Assembly (NCBI GenBank): GCA_044892525.1
Contig: CM097885.1
Location: 207,824,001 to 207,888,000 of the forward strand
Length of the DNA: 64,000 bases
Source of the DNA: Schmidtea polychroa
Taxonomy: Eukaryota
Direction of reading: 5' to 3'
The position numbers and the translations under genes are program-made. The notes below the pieces were generated by a model. That model had not been told where the DNA came from. It saw only the letters and a list, made by a program, of their open reading frames with translations, and did no database searches. Of this stretch, positions 1,770-59,900 are shown piece after piece (within the stretch, counting starts at the first letter, position 1; every line of letters begins with the position of its first letter).

Positions 1770-3350
1770 AATGAGAGAGAACTCCTATCTGTTAGAAGAT
1801 TCCGTTTTATAATAAAACCTAAAGATGAAATACTAAAGATAATAAATGATACACAAAGTATACATAGGCCTACTATGAATAATATTCTTAACCTCTTTAG
1901 TGGTAAAAGCTCGTCAACGTCCAACTTGCTAGGTCTCTCCTTCCAACCTCACATAGAGAATTGTTCCTCTGTCCATACCACTCTTGAAGATATTCGGTTG
2001 ACCATTAAGTACTGCACCTGGAATAGATAAAATTACTCTGTCTGATTGGAAACGTATAAGCCCGGACCTTACACTAATACAGGCCATCTTTAATAGCATT
2101 CTTGAATCCTCTTTATGTCCCGTAAGCTGGAAAACCTTTAGAACAAAACTGATCTTAAAAAACGGTAAAAATGAATCTAGTCATGAAGCCGGTTCCTGGA
2201 GACCTATATCGGAAATGAACACAGCCTACCGCATATTCTCTTCTCTCCTAAATAATCGTATCCTCCAGTGGATTAGTGAAGGCCACCTGATATCCTCTAA
2301 TCAGAAAGCCATAGGTGCACCCGATGGTTGTGCCGAACATAATGTAGTCCTACACTTGATTAAAGATTATTCATACAGGAACAACAATGAACTCCATATC
2401 ATATGGCTAGACATCACAGATGCTTTTGGTTCCATTCCTCATGATCTTATATGGGACTCACTTACCCAAATGGGACTACATGATAAAACTATAAATCTTA
2501 TCAAAGACATGTACTCTAATGTCCGCACAATCTTTGAATGTGAAGGAGAAAAATCCCAATCAGTACCCATCCATAAAGGGGTAAAACAAGGATGCCCCCT
2601 CTCCATGACCCTCTTCTGCCTATGTATTGACTTTATACCTAAACGTATCTTGATTAACCACCCTTTTTTCCTCCATGAACATAATAAAGGTATCTTAGCC
2701 TATGCGGATGATATCGCCCTTATATCTAGTTCCTACACATCGATCTCTAATGCACTAGCTGAAACTGTCGAACTTGCCGGAAACGTCAACCTGAAATTCA
2801 AACCCTCTAAATCTGGCTACTTCTCTATAAACATCAACGAAAAACCTCCTCCAATAACACTCTATAATGAATCAATCCCAATTATAGATGAGGATAACCT
2901 ATACAGATATCTTGGTGTAGACTTTTCTTCTAAGAATCGCCACAGCATTGAGGAACGACTTAATCTTGCGCTAAGTGACACAGCTAAAATCTTTGAATCT
3001 CACCTACATCCTGCTCAAAAAATCTCTTCTTACAAAATCTTTATACACTCTAGACTTATCTTCACTCTTAGAAACTGTGTAATCAACCACATGACACTTG
3101 ACTCGAAAAGACAACAAAGAGGCAAATTACTCCATCTTGGATATGACCAGAAATTAAAAGAGATCTTTAGAGTAGCAATGGGGGACAAAATTATGCAACT
3201 TAACAACAACTTTCTATACACCTACATTAAGTTAGGGGGTATTGGTCTCACATCTGCCATTGACGAATACCTAATACAAAGTATAGTGCATCTTATTAGG
3301 ATACTCAACTCCGACGACCTGGGTTTCCGACGTATGGTTATATCTGAGCT
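1770..3350 (+). mobile_element. Non-LTR retrotransposon reverse transcriptase, RLE-type (NeSL/Utopia/R2-like), 5' disrupted and 3' truncated
   Basis: ORF 2215-3429 plus upstream in-frame residues give APGIDK, WRPIS, QKAIGAPDGCAEHN, WLDITDAFGSIPH, GVKQGCPLS, AYADD, YRYLG and LY...GGIGL. No C-terminal CCHC or RLE endonuclease is seen before the sequence changes at ~3350. Confidence 0.9.
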
Positions 3351-3399
3351 AACAGAAGAAGAAATGAGCTTTAGCGTGCAGCCAGTTTTGTTAATTGTC

Positions 3400-3556
3400 A
3401 TTGTATCAATTGTTTCTAAAATATTTTAGTTTTAAATAAATATTTAAAAGCATATTTGTTATTTATATCCAAATTACCTACACGTGATATAACTAATATT
3501 TGTGGAGTCAGATTTTCGATTGGGTTAGTTCGAGTACCTACCCATCGAACCTAACA
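3400..3556 (+). repeat. 3' fragment of an LTR-like repeat family (terminal hairpin ending CCTAACA)
   Basis: Similar to 6380-6525 and 31700-31837: TTGTGGAGTCA followed by GTTAGTTCGA...TCGAACCTAACA. Confidence 0.6.
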
Positions 3557-7964: not shown

Positions 7965-8450
7965 ATGGAACGTGTCATTAATACCGTTAAAAAATGTATC
8001 GTTGAAGATTGTACTGCTGATCAAACTGTTGGAGATTTAAAATTATTTTTGGCTAATGAAAAACAAATTCCACTAGATAAAAATAAATTTTTATCTAGTG
8101 GAAATGTTCTGGACGATAAAACACTTTTGTCGTCATTAGGTGATTCCGCCACCATTGATATTGAATTTGGACATCACATTAAAAATCAAACGACAGCAAT
8201 TCCAGATAATTTGAATACAAATATGAAATTTTTCTATATTGGCGTTGAAAGTTTTATCCAAGAATCTACTGAGGATGAAAATTTTGATGATTGTAAAGTA
8301 TTTGTGGCCAATGAAAAACAAATTCCACTAGATAAAAATAAATGTTTATCTAGTGGAAATGTTCTGGACGATCAAGTTAAAAATCAAACGATGAAATTTT
8401 TCATTAATATCTTTGAAAGTTTTGTTTTGGTAGAAAGAAATGCTCAATGA
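7965..8450 (+). CDS. Ubiquitin-like domain ORF with internal partial duplication (gene fragment)
   Basis: TVGDLKLFLANEKQIPLDKNKFLSSGNVLDDKTLLSSLG aligns by eye with the ubiquitin fold. About 69 bp at 8049-8117 is repeated at 8304-8372. AG acceptor immediately before the ATG. Confidence 0.55.
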   Translation: MERVINTVKKCIVEDCTADQTVGDLKLFLANEKQIPLDKNKFLSSGNVLDDKTLLSSLGDSATIDIEFGHHIKNQTTAIPDNLNTNMKFFYIGVESFIQESTEDENFDDCKVFVANEKQIPLDKNKCLSSGNVLDDQVKNQTMKFFINIFESFVLVERNAQ

Positions 8451-13692: not shown

Positions 13693-14943
13693 AATAATGT
13701 TCGTTTTATTGACAGCATCCAATTTGTTAATTGTTCTTTAGCTAAAGCTGTGAAAACTCTTACTACTTTTCCTTTAACTTCATCGATCTTTCAGGGGTCG
13801 ATGATTCATTCTAAAGGTGTGTTTCCGTATGATTTTGCTACTTCTTTGGATGTTCTTGAGTTGACTTTGGAATTACTTCCTATTTGGTCTGATATTACGG
13901 AAGATCAGTACACTGAGGCTCATCTAATTTGGAGACAGCATAACTGTAATAATTTGTTAGATTATATGCTAATCTACCTAAAATTAGACGTATACCTCCT
14001 CGCAGACTATTTTCAGCAATTCCGTGGAAAGGCAATGGTCTGGATCCACTTAATTTCTACATTAACGGAACCTATAGAACTTTTGCAGGACATGGAAATG
14101 TACAATTTCTATGAGGGAGGTATACGGGGTGTGTTAACATTTGTTAACAAACATTACACGGCTACTTCAGCTAATACAGAATTATTGTATATAGATATAA
14201 ATAATCTGTATCGTTGGGCTCTTAGCCAAAATATTCCGTATGATGATTTTTCTTGTGTTAATGATAATTTGAATGATGTTTTGCTTGAATGTGTGAACAC
14301 GGATATTGATAATCTTCCATATGGGTACACTATGGAGGTTGATATCGATATTCCGGAATGTGTGCATGATTTCTTGAATGATTTTCCACTTGCGCCGGAA
14401 AAGTTGTGCCCACCTAATTCAAAAGTTGAGAAGCTTATGCTTACGCATTGGCCAAAGAGGAACTATGTTCTTCATTGGAGGCTTCTCAAATTGTACATAG
14501 AATTAGGTGCGGTTGTTGTAAATATTCATAGATGTAAAAATTGAAACAAGAACCTATATAGACACTAATACAACTTTACGATCTCAGTCTACAAGCGAAA
14601 TATATAGGGACTTGTTTAAATTGTATAATAAAAAAAGAATGAATTTGAGGTTGTGTAATTCATCTGAAAAGATGATAGTATGCTCCTCAAAACCGACTTT
14701 CAGACAGTCTATAAGAACCGATGTTGATCTGATAGCCACTCATTTAGAGAAGGACTCTATTTGTTTAGACAGACCTAGTTACATAGGTCAAACAGTACTA
14801 GATCTGTCTAAACTGCGGTTATACCAGCTCCAATATATTGATTTGGAGAAGTACAGGCGACAATTCAAATGCATAATAAATATTATAGCCGGTGATACAG
14901 ATAGCTTCTTTTTAGAAATTAAAAATATTAAATTGGTATTGTA
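13693..14943 (+). mobile_element. Polinton/Maverick (adintovirus-like) protein-primed DNA polymerase B fragment, degenerate
   Basis: RFIDSIQF..SLAK, KGVFPYD, YLKLDVYLLAD, GGIRG, LYIDINNLY, NYVLHWRLLKLY, PSYIGQTVLDLSKLRLY and GDTDS across ORFs 13750-14544 and 14612-14950. Confidence 0.88.
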
Positions 14944-15308: not shown

Positions 15309-18300
15309 CTACATCTCGCTCTCGGCTAACAAGGCATCAATATCCACCTGTAGCCGGGCGTCTTTTCGGAGTTGGCATGTTTCCGCGGAGATAATTCGAA
15401 ACTCTCCAGTTGAGATAGGCACTTGAGCCTTGGGACTTCGTTCCCTAGACGACTGGGCCGCAAACAGAGATGCTTCCAAAGCGGCGATGGTATTTCTTCG
15501 TTTTTGGTTCTTCTCGGCCCGTGATGGCCGTTTCCGCTTCTTGTGTACTGAATCAGGATTGATGACGTTCGCCGTCGAGGTGGCATTAATTTTAGGAGAT
15601 TTCGACAATGTCGAAGCGAAGAGGTGGGAAATCATTTTCGTGCCCACTGCAATGAGATTTAGCGACTTGAGGTTTGTCCTGGTGGTGGTGGACTGGGAAG
15701 ACGTTAGTCCCATCGATGATCGGGTACTCTCGCACTCTTTGTAGTAATTCCTTTTCGGTGTAGATTTTGTGGAGAGCCTCTAACTGGGCTTTGATAGTCA
15801 ACCGTTGACAACGGCTCTCCTCCAGGAGGCTGTCACGGCAGTGTTCCAGCCGCAATATCTTTGCTCGCTCCTCCTTCATTTGTGGTGGGGAGAACCACGT
15901 ACCGTAGAGTGCCGAATAGTATACCTCCCCAAAAAGTGTACCAGTGGTATACTATTTTTAAAAAGTGCTAAATATTATATCATGGTACACTAATTGGATT
16001 TCAACATAAAACAAAAAAAATAATGATTTTGGCATCTAATTAGTGTACCATGATATAATATTTAGCACTTTTTTATGCAATTAAAAAAAATTATTATGTT
16101 GATATTTCTTCATCAAGTGGTTTGAATTTTAAATTTGAATTGGTTTGAATCCAGTATAATATGGGTTTTTCCTTTGACTATATAAATATCGCCTGCTAGT
16201 TGTACCCTTTATTGCCAGCAGCACCCTGCTGGCGCCACTTATGTTGAACGATTTTTATTTTAAAAATATATTAAAATGACAGATCGTTAGCAGTCCATCC
16301 ATATATATAGTCAAAGGTTTTTTCATAAATTGATGTTGACATCTATGACCAATTATTAAAAACAAGCATCCTACAGAGCAATTTCTTGCAAATCAATGTC
16401 AGAATTGATTAATAAATATAACAATAAAAAAATATAAAGTTTTGATTTTGTGTGTTTAAGCAAGTTGTTGTGGATCTTACCGATAAATTGGTAAATTTTA
16501 TTTTGTGTAGCTGTTTTTTAAAAATTAGATAGCTTATTATAATTTTTAATTGCAGTTCGCCCATGTCACCAAAACAAAAACGAAAATCTATTACTATCGG
16601 AGAAAAATTGAAAATTGTGGCCCGAGCAAAGCGTGGTGAGTCGCTAAATTTTTTACAAAAACAAACAGGTTATCAACGATCACAAATAAGAAAATGGATT
16701 TCTAAAGAAAATGATTTAATTCAATCAAAACGCAATCAGAAAAGAGTAAGGGGTGGTGGGCGAAAGCCTGCTTTTCCTGAAGTGGAAAAATTGGTAATTG
16801 AATGGTTTAAGAGCCAAAGAGAAAAAAACTGGTTGTCAACTATAATATGTTTAGGAGGAAAGCGAAAACAATTTTCAAAAATATCGGGACCCCTACAACA
16901 ATAAACGAATTTTCATGCAGCAACAAATGGATCCGAGGAGTTTGCCGTCGAAATAAAATTTCATCAAGAAAAATTACACACCAAAGCCAACAATTCTTCA
17001 CCAATTGAAATTCACAATAAAGTGAAAAAATATCTTTCAGCAATTAATCAAAAAAGTGTAAATATTCCGAAAAATTTAATATTTAATATGGATGAAACTC
17101 CATGTTATTTTGATATGACCTATGGCCGAACGCTTCATTTTCAGGGAGAAAAAACAGTAGATGGTTTAAATACAGGTCATTGTAAAAATAGATTTACTAT
17201 CGTATTGTGTATTTCTGCAGCTGGTTCTATTATCCGAACGCAAATTATTTTAAAAGGTCTCAAAAAGATTCCAAAGGTAAAGTTGCCGAAAAATATTGAT
17301 TTAGTTCTGAGTGATGGGGGTTCTATGACAACTGATTTAATGATGAAATGGATACAAAATTGTTATAGCCAACAATGCAATACTTTTAGACACGAAAATT
17401 CTTTGCTGATCATGGATTCATATGGTTGTCAATTGAAAGACGTGATAATAGAAAACTTTAAAAAAAAGTGTCTTGCAGAAGTTATAATAATTCCACCAAA
17501 AACCACATCCTTTTTGCAACCACTAGATGTGTCGATCAATTATCCATTTAAAAACGCTTTAAGAGCCGAATAGAACAATTGGCTAGCAGAAGCACCTGAA
17601 GAATATACAAATAAAGGTTATCGAAAAAGGCCAAGTTACCAAAATTTGGTGGATTTTACTGTAGCAGCGCTGAAAAAAAATTTCTCCTGAAATCATAATG
17701 CGATCTTTTGAATGTTGTGGGATTGGGGAACGTGGACTAGAAAAACCTTTATCCAAATTAAATAAAAGAAGCAGTGTTAGCTTTTGATGAGGTTTTACAA
17801 CAGAGGTCTGAACAGACTCTGGTCCTGGAAGAAGAGGAATATCAAGAACATCCTGACGAGGAATATGAACTGCTATTTCAGGAAGAATTTTCCAGCGTTA
17901 GTACTGAAGAAATTTTATTGTCATCATTAAGTATTGAAGATGATTCTAACTGTGACGATGAGTCGGATTAAAATATTAACAGATTCATTTCACCAAATTT
18001 AATATATGTGTTTTTTGATTTAAACTATTTAAGTTTTTGTTTGGATTAATTTTTTATTAAAAAAAGTTCCTATATTATTTATTTAGGTATAGGTACATAA
18101 AATAATAATTACCTATTTATAATGTTTCTTGATACCAAATGAATTATATACCTGGTAAAATTATTTGCTTTGTTTAACTATAGTAAACATATTATAATTT
18201 CTTTTTTGTTATTTTTTTGCAAATTAAATATAATACATTTTATAACATTACCTACTTGTTATTGTGTTTAATTTAATTAATTTGAATTTTGTCATTAAGT

Positions 18301-48206: not shown

Positions 48207-48248
48207 GCCATTAGACGGTCTTATCGAAATCTATATAAATCATATATG
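48207..48248 (+). other. Planarian spliced-leader exon sequence without the SL-RNA intron
   Basis: GCCATTAGACGGTCTTATCGAAATCTATATAAATCATATATG matches the Schmidtea SL1 as I recall it (GCCGTTAGACGGTCTTATCGAAATCTATATAAATCTTATATG) at 40 of 42 positions. It is followed by AAATG, not a GT donor. Confidence 0.85.

Positions 48249-58059: not shown

Positions 58060-58096
<37 letters not shown>
58044..58096. repeat. (TA)n microsatellite
   Basis: Uninterrupted TA run. Confidence 0.95.
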
Positions 58097-58119
<23 letters not shown>

Positions 58120-58936
58120 CTACCGACTGTTTTAGCTTGATATCCGAAAGAGCTCTCTATCTTACGCATTTGTTTGATCTAAAATGATGTTCTCAAAAAA
58201 CGAACACAAATATTTAATATAATATTTTGCGTATTAAGTTTGGATCACTGGATCACATGAACTAAATAGTATATAACTAAAAACTCAATACCAAAACATG
58301 AATGGTATTTTACAGAATACAGCCAAACACGAGAAAAATTTATATCTTAAAATTTGACAGTATACGTAATATAGTTTTAGGTCTCGACTTAACAGAACGT
58401 AAATATTTTATTAAATTAAGCAATAGAGGAATTAGCATATATTCGTAATGATCGTAGAATAACATTGAAAGATCAGGAAATAATCTTAATTTATTTATAA
58501 TTTATGCAGTTTCCAATGAAAATCAAGTACACTTACACTTATAAACCAATTACAATTCATACACCAGATGATTCAATTGATTATTACACAGTTATTCTGA
58601 AATTTAATTAATATATGAGTTTGTTAATTATTAGTCTAAATTATTAGTACGATCGAAATAATATATAATTATACCGTACATTGCAGGCCGGGAATTTTCT
58701 TGCAAAAAACAAAATCTAATAAATGTATTAATAGTATATATAATGACATAAAATAAATATACAATGTGTTAACCAATAAAGGCACGGTTAAAACGGCGTG
58801 GACAATAAAGGCGCAGATAAATATATATCGAATCGTGAATAAAGTATTTATAACTAGATTCTAAAAGAATATATGGACTAGCTGGAGAGATATATCTATA
58901 TATAAACATTACAAGCTTTGTGATACCCAGTGCAAA

Positions 58937-58989
58937 TCCCAATAGTAGACTAGTTTCGAGCTTTTGGCTCTCATCAGTACTATTCAGGA
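58937..58989 (-). ncRNA. Type I hammerhead ribozyme, intact core, palindromic minimal stem III
   Basis: UCC-UG-AAUAGUA CUGAUGA GAGC-CAAAA-GCUC GAAA CUAGUC / UACUAUU-GGGA: full catalytic core, stem I with a UG bulge, loop II CAAAA, GUC cleavage triplet (cut between 58948 and 58947) and self-complementary ACUAGU. Confidence 0.9.
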
Positions 58990-59009
58990 GACGCGAATAT
59001 TTATCTTCG

Positions 59010-59023
59010 CGCCAGGTAAGTAT
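59010..59023 (-). ncRNA. U1 snRNA 5'-end-like sequence at the head of the hammerhead repeat (second copy 59366-59379, plus strand)
   Basis: ATACTTACCTGGCG equals the conserved metazoan U1 5' end. The rest of U1 (70K loop, Sm site) is absent. It could equally be a consensus 5' splice site read on the other strand. Confidence 0.5.
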
Positions 59024-59399
59024 ACAATATTGTCGATTCAACTCTATTGCATACTTTACCTACTACACTGGAAATCACATCACTTGCAAATTCGCTAAAT
59101 CACAGAAAAAATATCTGCAAACTTGTAAACATGGCGCATGAAAAATCATATTCACCTCTGGAAACACCGTCATACACAGAAACCGTCATACACAAAGTGC
59201 ATCCGTAAACCGTTAGCATTTTTAACTTGTAATGGTGTAAAATATTTTTTTTACGGATGTCTAACATTAAAATGATATAAACATTACAAGCTTTGTGATA
59301 CCCAGTGCAAATCCCAATAGTAGTACCAGGGAAAGTATGCAATAGAGTTGAATCAACAATATTGTATACTTACCTGGCGCGAAGATAAATCTTCATGTC

Positions 59400-59452
59400 T
59401 CCTGAATAGTGCTGATGAGAGCCAAAAGCTCGAAACTAAACTACTATTGGGA
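59400..59452 (+). ncRNA. Second hammerhead copy, cleavage triplet mutated (probably inactive)
   Basis: CTGATGAGAGCCAAAAGCTCGAAAC is intact, but TAGTC has become TAAAC. Stem I keeps pairing through an A-U to G-U change. Confidence 0.8.
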
Positions 59453-59659
59453 TTTGCACTGGGTATCACAAAGCTTGTAATGTTTATATTATTTTAATGT
59501 TAGACATCCGTAAANNNNNNNNNNNNNNNNNNNNNNNNNNNNNNNNNNNNNNNNNNNNNNNNNNNNNNNNNNNNNNNNNNNNNNNNNNNNNNNNNNNNNN
59601 NNNNNNNNNNNNNNNNNNNNNNNNNNNNNNNNNNNNNNNNNNNNNNNNNNNNNNNNNGC

Positions 59660-59900
59660 GCCTTTATTATCCTCGCCATTTTTGTCAAGCATTTATTGGG
59701 GTAAACCCTATTATATTACAGAGCTTGCTGCATACGACGTCACTCCGGGCTTGATCCTGTAAAAATTTTCTTTTGATTTTTTTCCAGGGGCTTGTTTTTG
59801 ATTATGATGCTTCCACATGATGCCTTCAATGCCTTCAATCTCTATTGTCTGCTCACCGAAAATAGAGATTCTTTCACAAAGTGGTGGTGGAGACGATATT
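59660..59900 (-). mobile_element. Possible piggyBac transposase N-terminal remnant
   Basis: Acidic stretch, then W...RIKPGVTSYAA, like the piggyBac PGPT.YA motif. Broken frames, ends at a gap. Confidence 0.45.

What the first reader, a model, noticed from the sequence alone, without database searches (positions are those of the whole stretch)
58899..59514. Small repeat fusing a U1 snRNA 5' end to a dimer-type hammerhead ribozyme
Seen: each full monomer reads ~35 nt leader, then ATACTTACCTGGCG, an 8-bp hairpin (GGCGCGAA/TTCGCGTC), a type I hammerhead, and a 3' tail ending in an A-run. Known: the hammerhead layout (UG bulge in stem I, CAAA-type loop II, palindromic stem III needing dimerisation) is that of Schistosoma Sm-alpha, newt satellite 2 and Penelope-associated minimal hammerheads. 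ATACTTACCTGG is the 5'-splice-site-binding end of U1. Inference: this may be a U1-headed retrozyme or SINE. Such an RNA could borrow snRNA-type transcription, pair with pre-mRNA splice donors as a U1 mimic, or release a ~70-nt U1-headed 5' fragment on self-cleavage. I do not know of a described U1-hammerhead chimera.
Basis: partly seen in the sequence, partly recalled or inferred. Interest (0 to 1): 0.88.

Follow-up and report, generated by a model that had tools for sequence, protein, structure and literature searches.

The report
Hammerhead retroelement with U1-like hairpin arm
This is one locus of a very abundant, gene-less, self-cleaving-ribozyme retroelement of a known kind (retrozyme / Penelope-like derivative), and its 12 bases identical to the start of U1 spliceosomal RNA sit inside the element as one arm of a hairpin, so nothing but those bases supports a U1-ribozyme fusion RNA.

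Summary
The motifs are real but the layout differs from the finding. There is no array of small monomers. Two element copies lie head to head. The minus-strand copy (58900-59322) is one 375-nt unit plus a 48-nt terminal redundancy and has an intact type I hammerhead. The plus-strand copy (59323-59514) runs into the gap and has a broken helix III.

More than 10,000 contigs of one run fit the unit, and a second species carries it. The repeat continues at equal depth at least 100 nt upstream of ATACTTACCTGG, so the 12-mer is not the head of the element.

In the fold the 12-mer is the 3' arm of a 16-bp hairpin, with unpaired probability at most 0.11. No U1 model match appears even at E of 10 or less.

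Copies end at two adjacent 3' sites, which is the "tail" signature of Penelope-like elements. The 375-nt monomer is strongly self-paired, like animal non-LTR retrozymes.

RNA contigs carry the family but show no splice joint at the 12-mer on either strand. Why the 12-mer is a perfect U1 match, and on the other strand a perfect splice donor, is unresolved. It may be a relic of a Penelope-type intron hairpin, an antisense donor, or chance.

The scan met this family before on other DNA of this genome, and two follow-ups reached the same verdict. It is a new member of a known kind, of modest interest.

The parts
58900..59322 (-). Minus-strand element. One 375-nt unit runs cut site to cut site (59322 down to 58948), followed by a 48-nt repeat of the tail (58947 down to 58900).
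   Evidence: Direct repeat 58900-58948 = 59275-59323, 100% identical, spacing 375. Fold of the monomer is -112 kcal/mol, z=-6.5. Family-level depth covers 58900 to beyond 59130.
58935..58990 (-). Intact type I hammerhead of copy A. Helix I 5' strand 58978-58990; core plus helix II 58953-58977; helix III palindrome ACUAGU and C17 at 58948-58954; helix I 3' strand 58935-58947. The cut falls between 58948 and 58947.
   Evidence: Sequence, exact pattern match, HH9 alignment 22.3 bits with local E=0.007. No variant at 10% or more across over 10,000 contigs in 58900-58979.
59012..59023 (-). AUACUUACCUGG, identical to the first 12 nt of U1 snRNA. On the plus strand it reads CCAG|GTAAGTAT, a consensus splice donor.
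   Evidence: Unpaired probability at most 0.11 in the 167-nt unit. No variant at 10% or more in 59004-59032 in four runs.
59014..59061 (-). Hairpin HP1. The 5' arm AGGUAAAGUAUGCAAUA pairs with the 3' arm UAUUGUAUACUUACCU (16 bp, one bulged A), with an inner 4-bp stem.
   Evidence: MFE and centroid structures. The 5' arm is the most variable part of the family (6 of 20 positions, P=0.001).
58990..59013 (-). Hairpin HP2, GGCGCGAA...UUCGCGUC (8 bp in this copy). In most family members it is a 10-bp stem closed by a GAAA loop.
   Evidence: Majority letters 58998 T>G and 59003 A>C.
59245..59322 (-). Long form of the tail (70 nt after the cut site) plus an A8 run. It begins at the first base after the cleavage site, where it abuts the inverted copy B.
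   Evidence: Inverted repeat 59250-59324 / 59440-59514, 99% complementary. Sequence.
59067..59244 (-). 5' part of the unit (leader). 59067-59100 pairs with the tail in the monomer fold.
   Evidence: Depth stays about 2 million to 59110 and loose-end consensus continues to about 59142. Fold. Family status of 59143-59244 was not tested.
59323..59514 (+). Copy B, 5'-truncated and inverted. U1-like 12-mer 59366-59377, HP2 59376-59399, hammerhead core 59412-59436, helix III mutated (ACUAAAC), tail running into the gap.
59515..59657 (.). Run of N (gap or masked) that hides the 3' end of copy B. It was left untouched.

Best explanation
The locus holds two head-to-head insertions of a short, gene-less retroelement that carries a hammerhead ribozyme. 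It is an animal non-LTR retrozyme, that is, a non-autonomous derivative of Penelope-like elements (PLEs).

Proposed mechanism:
- A multimeric or read-through transcript folds.
- Two hammerheads pair through the palindromic helix III (ACUAGU) and cut after GUC. This releases a 375-nt, highly self-paired monomer that may be circularised.
- A PLE reverse transcriptase starts cDNA synthesis inside the RNA, at either of two adjacent sites about 48 and about 80 nt past the cut site.
- This produces copies with a short or a long tail, and 5' truncations.

The sequence AUACUUACCUGG is an internal part of this RNA. It forms the 3' arm of hairpin HP1, which is followed by a GNRA-capped hairpin and helix I. 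It is not a U1 gene fragment, not an RNA 5' end, and not a free guide.

Its identity to U1 is most simply a by-product of being the complement of a splice-donor-like arm, whether as a relic or by chance. D. virilis Penelope has a 75-nt intron that ends at helix I. Here a GU..AG interval of 80 nt ends at the same place.

Shown: the anatomy, the abundance, the two 3'-end classes, a 5' end at the cut site, presence in RNA contigs, and presence in a second species. Inferred: cleavage, circularisation, mobilisation by a PLE enzyme, and the origin of the 12-mer.
For: - Hammerhead core and helices are intact in copy A.
- 10,506 contigs of run X1 fit the stretch. Summed depth is 1.4-4.6 million against 200-1,200 in the flank 58840-58889.
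- There are no variants at 10% or more in the hammerhead core plus tail (0 of 80 positions, P=0.002).
- Depth declines from the 3' to the 5' side in both species, as expected for 5' truncation.
- Loose ends at 58900-58902 fall into two classes. One continues as ...TAAAATA / TTTTTTTACGGATGTCTAACATT, which is the long tail also seen in B and B'. The other goes into unrelated AT-rich DNA, as copy A does. This matches the two adjacent reverse-transcription start sites and the optional 30-40-bp tail of PLEs (PMC11167929).
- Unit spacing is 375 nt, and the monomer fold has z=-6.5. This matches the 150-450-bp, low-GC, highly self-paired repeats with type I hammerheads, which are also reported in platyhelminths (PMC7229834).
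- The hammerhead architecture fits the published description: helix I about 6 bp, helix II 4 bp, helix III 1-2 bp with a small palindromic loop, active as dimers (PMC4209133).
- B' starts at the first base after the cut site.
- The 12-mer is paired, and repeat depth is flat across and upstream of it.
- There is no U1 model match at E of 10 or less.
Against: - No autonomous PLE sharing this hammerhead and tail was found. The only reverse transcriptase in the window (2215-3429) is 55 kb away and unrelated in position.
- Self-cleavage and circles are not shown. Rfam scores are below the gathering cut-offs, and MFE folding of the isolated ribozyme does not give the catalytic fold.
- A 12 of 12 (13 of 13 against human U1, from memory) identity is improbable by chance for one family. 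It stays invariant while its pairing partner varies and loses pairs (G.A at 59058 in about 55% of depth). Hairpin pairing alone therefore does not explain its constancy.
- The ratio of RNA to DNA-like depth rises about 2.5-fold at about 59050 toward the hammerhead. This could mark an RNA 5' end only about 27 nt before the 12-mer. Contig depth is a poor measure, so the evidence is weak.
Confidence: 0.72

Rival explanations
1. U1-headed chimera. The RNA starts at AUACUUACCUGG, uses snRNA-type transcription, and acts as a U1 mimic on 5' splice sites or releases a roughly 70-nt U1-headed fragment after self-cleavage.
For: - Perfect 12-mer at both copies.
- Invariant at the 10% level in two species.
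- A step in the RNA/DNA-like depth ratio about 27 nt upstream.
- One deletion variant lacking the pairing arm (joint 59031>59067) is present in both a DNA-like and an RNA run.
Against: - The repeat continues at equal depth at least 100 nt upstream, so the 12-mer is not the head of the retrotransposed RNA.
- It is paired, with unpaired probability at most 0.11.
- No U1 stem-loops or Sm site were detected by the covariance model at E of 10 or less.
- RNA contigs span the upstream leader (pieces 14, 16, 19).
- Its invariance is not significant (P=0.13).
Confidence: 0.05
2. Relic or regulator of a Penelope-type intron on the ribozyme strand. The HP1 5' arm (AG|GUAAAGUAU) is the donor, and the acceptor is CCUGAAUAG| inside the helix I 5' strand. 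The U1-like arm lies in this 80-nt intron and masks the donor, which balances spliced against unspliced RNA.
For: - D. virilis Penelope has a 75-nt intron 46 nt after its start site. Its 3' end maps to the 5' end of helix I (PMC2377424; PMC4209133).
- Here GU at 59059 to AG at 58980 spans 80 nt and ends at the same place.
- Anything that pairs perfectly with a consensus donor must read like the U1 5' end.
Against: - The GU is replaced by GG in about 55% of family depth, and the donor arm is the most variable segment.
- No joint skipping 59059-58980 appears among the listed joints of RNA runs X7 and X13. Logan contigs drop rare forms, and 12 joints were not shown.
- The element has no ORF that would need a spliced mRNA.
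Confidence: 0.18
3. The selected feature is on the other strand. CCAG|GTAAGTAT is a consensus donor / U1 snRNP binding site carried by thousands of copies. It would affect splicing, exonisation or premature polyadenylation of host or antisense transcripts.
For: - Perfect 12-nt complementarity to U1 on the plus strand at 59012-59023.
- The U1-like arm is constant while its partner arm drifts.
Against: - No joint or loose end at 59016|59017 among those listed for the RNA runs.
- Tail structure, the A-run and the 3'-biased depth all show that the ribozyme strand is the transposition intermediate.
- Orientation relative to host genes could not be examined.
Confidence: 0.1
4. Pure coincidence. An AT-rich hairpin arm happens to equal the U1 5' end and has no splicing-related history.
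For: - Many repeat families and many notable motifs were screened.
- The invariance of the 12-mer is not significant.
- No comparable motif lies near 40 other hammerheads.
Against: The chance of one given 12-mer on either strand of a 375-nt unit is about 3-4 in 100,000 (my arithmetic). The partner arm is also donor-like.
Confidence: 0.2

Closest known systems
Animal non-LTR retrozymes (Cervera and de la Pena 2020, PMC7229834), proposed to be non-autonomous PLE derivatives (bioRxiv 10.64898/2026.07.22.740005)
   Same: Canonical type I hammerhead with a short palindromic helix III. Unit of 150-450 bp (here 375), low GC, no ORF, strongly self-paired monomer. Very high copy number. Reported in platyhelminths.
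   Different: At this locus there are only 1.13 units plus an inverted truncated copy, not a long tandem array. Circular RNA is not shown. The conserved module upstream of helix I (U1-like/donor-like hairpin plus GNRA hairpin) is not described for retrozymes, as far as the papers read here show.
Penelope-like element pLTR with hammerhead and 3' 'tail' (PMC4209133; PMC11167929; PMC2377424)
   Same: Hammerhead near the 3' end of the repeat. Two adjacent 3'-end classes about 30 nt apart. Head-to-head inverted copies, which fit cleavage and extension on both DNA strands. AT-rich flanks. A GU..AG interval that ends at helix I, as the D. virilis intron does.
   Different: No RT/GIY-YIG ORF is adjacent. 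The hammerhead is of the canonical 4-bp helix II type, not the min-HHR with 6-bp helix II typical of many metazoan PLEs. Splicing is not seen.
Schistosome Sm-alpha / Sj-alpha SINE-like hammerhead repeats
   Same: A flatworm-type (probable) host. Dispersed, abundant, roughly 330-bp ORF-less repeat with a dimer-dependent type I hammerhead with a stem I bulge and an A-rich loop II (from memory and PMC4209133).
   Different: No sequence comparison could be run here. Sm-alpha is reported to have Pol III boxes, and none are evident in this unit.
U1 snRNA and snRNA-headed SINEs (SINEU; from memory)
   Same: Identity to U1 nucleotides 1-12.
   Different: No further U1 structure. The motif is internal and paired. 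SINEU heads are long snRNA-derived segments at the element's 5' terminus.

Membership tests
Hammerhead ribozyme, type I (canonical metazoan, dimer-dependent) | Conserved core CUGANGA ... GAAA and a cleavable NUH triplet | tested here: met
   Copy A has CUGAUGA, GAAA and GUC|U. The family majority is identical. In copy B the triplet context is mutated (ACUAAAC).
Hammerhead ribozyme, type I (canonical metazoan, dimer-dependent) | Helix II of about 4 bp with G10.1-C11.1; helix I of about 6 bp formed by the flanks; helix III of 1-2 bp with a small palindromic loop (PMC4209133) | tested here: met
   GAGC/GCUC with loop CAAAA; AAUAGUA/UACUAUU plus bulge plus CC/GG; ACUAGU.
Hammerhead ribozyme, type I (canonical metazoan, dimer-dependent) | Reaches the Rfam gathering score | tested here: not met
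   HH9 scores 22.3 against 52 bits and Hammerhead_1 scores 16.9 against 34 bits. This is expected for a near-absent helix III.
Hammerhead ribozyme, type I (canonical metazoan, dimer-dependent) | Self-cleavage | not testable with these tools
   Only indirect evidence: the inverted tail piece begins at the first base after the predicted cut.
U1 snRNA / U1-derived RNA | 5' sequence AUACUUACCUG | tested here: met
   12 of 12 at 59012-59023 (minus) and 59366-59377 (plus).
U1 snRNA / U1-derived RNA | The sequence lies at the RNA 5' end and is single-stranded | tested here: not met
   The repeat unit and the RNA contigs extend upstream. The motif is paired in HP1, with unpaired probability at most 0.11.
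U1 snRNA / U1-derived RNA | Stem-loops I-IV and an Sm site (Rfam U1 model) | tested here: not met
   No U1 match at E of 10 or less on 58700-59520, either strand.
U1 snRNA / U1-derived RNA | snRNA-type promoter (PSE) upstream | not testable with these tools
   No true U1 gene of this species was available for comparison.
Animal non-LTR retrozyme | Type I hammerhead in 150-450-bp, low-GC, ORF-less repeats arranged in tandem | tested here: inconclusive
   The unit is 375 nt, local GC about 29%, with no ORF beyond chance frames. Only 1.13 units are present here. First-stage notes (unchecked) report 371-373-nt arrays elsewhere in this genome.
Animal non-LTR retrozyme | Highly self-paired monomer expressed as circular RNA | tested here: inconclusive
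   Self-pairing is met (z=-6.5). The family is present in RNA-run contigs. Circularity is not testable.
Penelope-like element (non-autonomous derivative or pLTR) | Two adjacent 3'-end classes ('tail') downstream of the hammerhead | tested here: met
   Short end at 58900-58902 and a long form about 30 nt further to the A-run. Compare PMC11167929.
Penelope-like element (non-autonomous derivative or pLTR) | RT plus GIY-YIG ORF between the repeats, or an autonomous partner sharing the 3' module | tested here: not met
   No such ORF lies in or near 58900-59514. No partner is retrievable with these tools.
Penelope-type pLTR intron | Functional GU-AG intron ending at helix I | tested here: inconclusive
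   The layout is present in copy A (80 nt). The GU is lost in about 55% of family depth, and no spliced joint is listed in the RNA contigs.

The most novel reading that the evidence does not exclude
The invariant AUACUUACCUGG, or its complement the perfect donor CCAG|GUAAGUAU, is the selected payload of a more-than-10,000-copy, ribozyme-processed and possibly circular RNA family. Once the variable partner arm is absent or opened (transcripts may start about 27 nt upstream), the RNA could pair with 5' splice sites as a U1 decoy. Alternatively, the antisense copies could recruit U1 snRNP genome-wide. Either way a mobile element would be tied to splice-site recognition in a trans-splicing animal.
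Probability: 0.07. Interest if true: 0.8.

Novelty: new member of a known kind. Interest (0 to 1): 0.3.

Why it matters
If the best explanation is right, this is another large family of hammerhead-bearing, PLE-dependent retroelements, probably in a flatworm. It is useful for repeat annotation.

It also gives genomic support for two published ideas. One is internal, two-site initiation of reverse transcription by PLEs. The other is use of ribozyme-cut RNA as template, since one copy starts at the cut site.

The one point that goes beyond the ordinary is a conserved hairpin that pairs a donor-like arm with a perfect U1-like arm directly upstream of helix I. This is the position where D. virilis Penelope has its intron. 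It offers a concrete test of whether ribozyme folding and splicing are coupled in this element class.

Tried and rejected
1. Rfam at gathering thresholds on the whole window returned nothing. The permissive search returned only weak hammerhead matches and no U1.

2. Metagenome scan with the helix II-tolerant hammerhead pattern gave 38 loci and 40 hammerheads.

3. Two viral-contig scans, one for the hammerhead and one for U1 12-mer plus hammerhead, found nothing.

4. I tried to reach other genomic copies through spurious ORF products of the element in the protein collection. No candidate was found.

5. Literature search for the exact sequences and for U1 plus Penelope plus hammerhead found nothing.

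6. Thermodynamic folding of the isolated ribozyme, as monomer and as dimer, did not return the catalytic fold and is uninformative.

7. Template-switch chimera with U1, as in L1-U6 chimeras, was rejected. Such chimeras carry whole snRNAs at the 5' end, not 12 internal bases.

8. SL RNA gene on the antisense strand was rejected. There is no SL exon similarity and no Sm-like site after the donor.

Only the majority letters reported by the read-laying tool are quoted.

Full report
**What is in the sequence**

The region is not a tandem array of small monomers, and Tandem Repeats Finder reports none. The repeat finder shows three relationships:
- a 167-nt inverted repeat (58900-59066 against 59323-59489, 94% complementary);
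- a 75-nt inverted repeat (59250-59324 against 59440-59514, 99%);
- a 49-nt perfect direct repeat (58900-58948 = 59275-59323, spacing 375).

Read on the minus strand, 59322 down to 58948 is one unit that runs from one hammerhead cut site to the next (375 nt). It is followed by 48 nt that repeat the start of the unit. Copy B (59323-59514) lies on the plus strand, head to head with it, and runs into the N stretch. I left the N stretch untouched.

**The motifs**

ATACTTACCTGGCG and CTGATGAGAGCCAAAAGCTCGAAAC each occur exactly twice in the 64 kb, once per copy, far above chance.

In copy A the hammerhead is complete:
- core CUGAUGA / GAAA;
- helix II GAGC/GCUC with loop CAAAA;
- helix I AAUAGUA/UACUAUU, extended past a UG bulge;
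- helix III reduced to the palindrome ACUAGU;
- GUC followed by the cut between 58948 and 58947.

This is the canonical metazoan type I architecture. Helix I is about 6 bp, helix II is 4 bp, and helix III is 1-2 bp with a small palindromic loop, thought to act as a dimer (PMC4209133).

Rfam finds it only below threshold (HH9 22.3 bits, local E=0.007). Copy B has ACUAAAC in place of ACUAGUC and is presumably dead.

**Where the U1-like bases sit**

Folding the 167-nt core (z=-5.3) and the 375-nt monomer (z=-6.5) gives the same local picture. AUACUUACCU is the 3' arm of a 16-bp hairpin (HP1). Its 5' arm is AGGUAAAGUAUGCAAUA, a splice-donor-like sequence with one extra A.

HP1 is followed directly by a second hairpin (HP2) and by helix I. 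In the partition function the 12 bases have unpaired probabilities of 0 to 0.11. In the monomer fold the leader upstream of HP1 pairs with the tail downstream of the cut site, which gives a highly self-paired RNA.

A permissive covariance-model search of both strands (E of 10 or less) returns no U1 match.

**Family-level evidence**

Laying the contigs of four public runs on 58840-59130 at 80% likeness or more gave the following.
- *Abundance.* 10,506 contigs of run X1 fit. Summed depth is 1.4-4.6 million, against 200-1,200 in the left flank, so the family is enormous.
- *Extent.* The repeat does not start at the 12-mer. Depth is flat (about 2.0-2.6 million) from 59010 to about 59100, and the loose-end consensus continues to about 59142.
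- *Truncation.* Depth is highest over the hammerhead 3' half and tail and falls toward the 5' side in both species, as with 5'-truncated retrocopies.
- *3' ends.* At 58900-58902 the copies split into two classes. One class continues with the roughly 30-nt extension ending in an A-run, which B and B' also carry. The other class, like copy A, ends there in unrelated AT-rich DNA.
- *Second species.* Run X9 (a second, coded organism) holds the hammerhead, HP2 and U1-like block at about 93-95% identity.
- *Transcription.* RNA-labelled runs X7 and X13 contain the family, while the unique flank has zero depth in them.
- *Splicing.* No listed RNA joint uses the antisense donor (59016|59017) or the sense GU..AG interval. 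The one RNA joint (59031>59067) is also present in X1 and has GT..AC ends, so it is a deletion variant.

**Conservation**

Fifteen positions differ from copy A in 10% or more of depth in some run. None lies in the hammerhead core plus tail (0 of 80, P=0.002). Six lie in the HP1 5' arm (6 of 20, P=0.001) and six in HP2 or the helix I 5' strand.

None lies in the 29-nt block holding the 12-mer, but that is not significant (P=0.13).

The majority letters turn HP2 into a 10-bp stem with a GAAA loop. In about 55% of depth they replace the GU of the donor-like arm by GG, which makes a G.A mismatch opposite the U1-like arm.

**What it is**

Five features match animal non-LTR retrozymes, which are reported in platyhelminths among other phyla (PMC7229834) and have recently been argued to be non-autonomous PLE sequences (bioRxiv 10.64898/2026.07.22.740005):
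- the unit size;
- the low GC content;
- the absence of an ORF;
- the self-paired monomer;
- the type I hammerhead.

The two adjacent 3'-end classes match the PLE 'tail'. Frangieh et al. traced that tail to two internal reverse-transcription start sites downstream of the hammerhead. They also found nicking and extension on both DNA strands, which would give head-to-head copies like A and B (PMC11167929).

The inverted tail piece begins at the first base after the predicted cut (ambiguity is limited to the shared 'gta'). This is what a template RNA with a ribozyme-made 5' end would leave. It is a single locus, so it is suggestive only.

**Why the 12-mer looks like U1**

Three readings remain.
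1. *Relic of a Penelope-type intron.* In D. virilis a 75-nt intron starts 46 nt after the transcription start and ends at the 5' end of helix I (PMC2377424; PMC4209133). Here GU (59059) to AG (58980) spans 80 nt and ends inside the helix I 5' strand. A hairpin arm that masks a consensus donor must read like U1. Against this: the donor is lost in more than half of the family, and no spliced RNA is seen.
2. *The perfect donor on the other strand is the selected feature.* No junction supports this.
3. *Coincidence.*

Forty unrelated hammerheads from metagenomes have no such motif within 200 nt, so the motif is specific to this family.

One weak, unexplained observation keeps a small door open for the U1-mimic idea. 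The ratio of RNA to DNA-like depth rises about 2.5-fold at about 59050.

**Earlier notes**

The scan has met this family repeatedly on other DNA of the same genome. Two follow-up reports reached the same negative verdict on U1. I list the notes that I used or tested in the report's earlier-findings field.

**Verdict**

This is a real, intact member of a known class, and it carries a family-specific hairpin module of unknown role. The U1-ribozyme chimera is not supported.

Noticed in passing
window 58773-58814 and 59658-59699: A 42-nt inverted repeat (79% complementary, relatively GC-rich) flanks the whole element pair on either side of the gap. The locus may therefore be part of a larger palindrome, or the two arms may be an inverted duplication and not two independent insertions.
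   Followed up: no
window 59050 (bins 59040-59059): The ratio of RNA-run (X7) to DNA-like-run (X1) summed contig depth steps from about 2.4 to about 6-7 per thousand when going from the leader into the HP1 loop and U1-like arm. This could be an RNA 5' end or an artefact of contig depth.
   Followed up: partly
window 59031-59067: A family variant lacks 35 nt (the HP1 5' arm and loop) but keeps the U1-like arm. It is seen in one contig each of a DNA-like and an RNA run.
   Followed up: no
window 2215-3429 (+): A 404-aa ORF with a reverse transcriptase domain (RVT_1, E=1e-26, YADD motif). It is probably a non-LTR retrotransposon remnant. No GIY-YIG domain was seen nearby.
   Followed up: partly
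window 17022-17573 (+), 13750-14544 (+), 7965-8450 (+): A DDE_1 transposase fragment (E=4e-16), a weak organellar/viral-type DNA polymerase B match (E=9e-5, below cut-off) and a ubiquitin-like ORF. The window is rich in mobile-element debris.
   Followed up: no
window 48207-48245: The sequence ...CCATTAGACGGTCTTATCGAAATCTATATAAATC resembles, from my memory only, a planarian spliced-leader exon. Together with about 28% GC this suggests a freshwater flatworm host. The exact string was not found in the paper library.
   Followed up: partly
window 58063-58117: A perfect (AT)27 microsatellite lies about 800 nt from the element.
   Followed up: no
L002 (88-112 and 1114-1138), L027 (25-49 and 1043-1067): Metagenome contigs with two identical hammerheads about 1,020 nt apart in direct orientation, within a conserved '...ACCGTCGGTGAATTC...' context shared by about 15 other loci. 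They look like multimeric copies of a roughly 1-kb ribozyme-bearing unit (a circular RNA/DNA replicon or retrozyme-like element) unrelated to the window.
   Followed up: no
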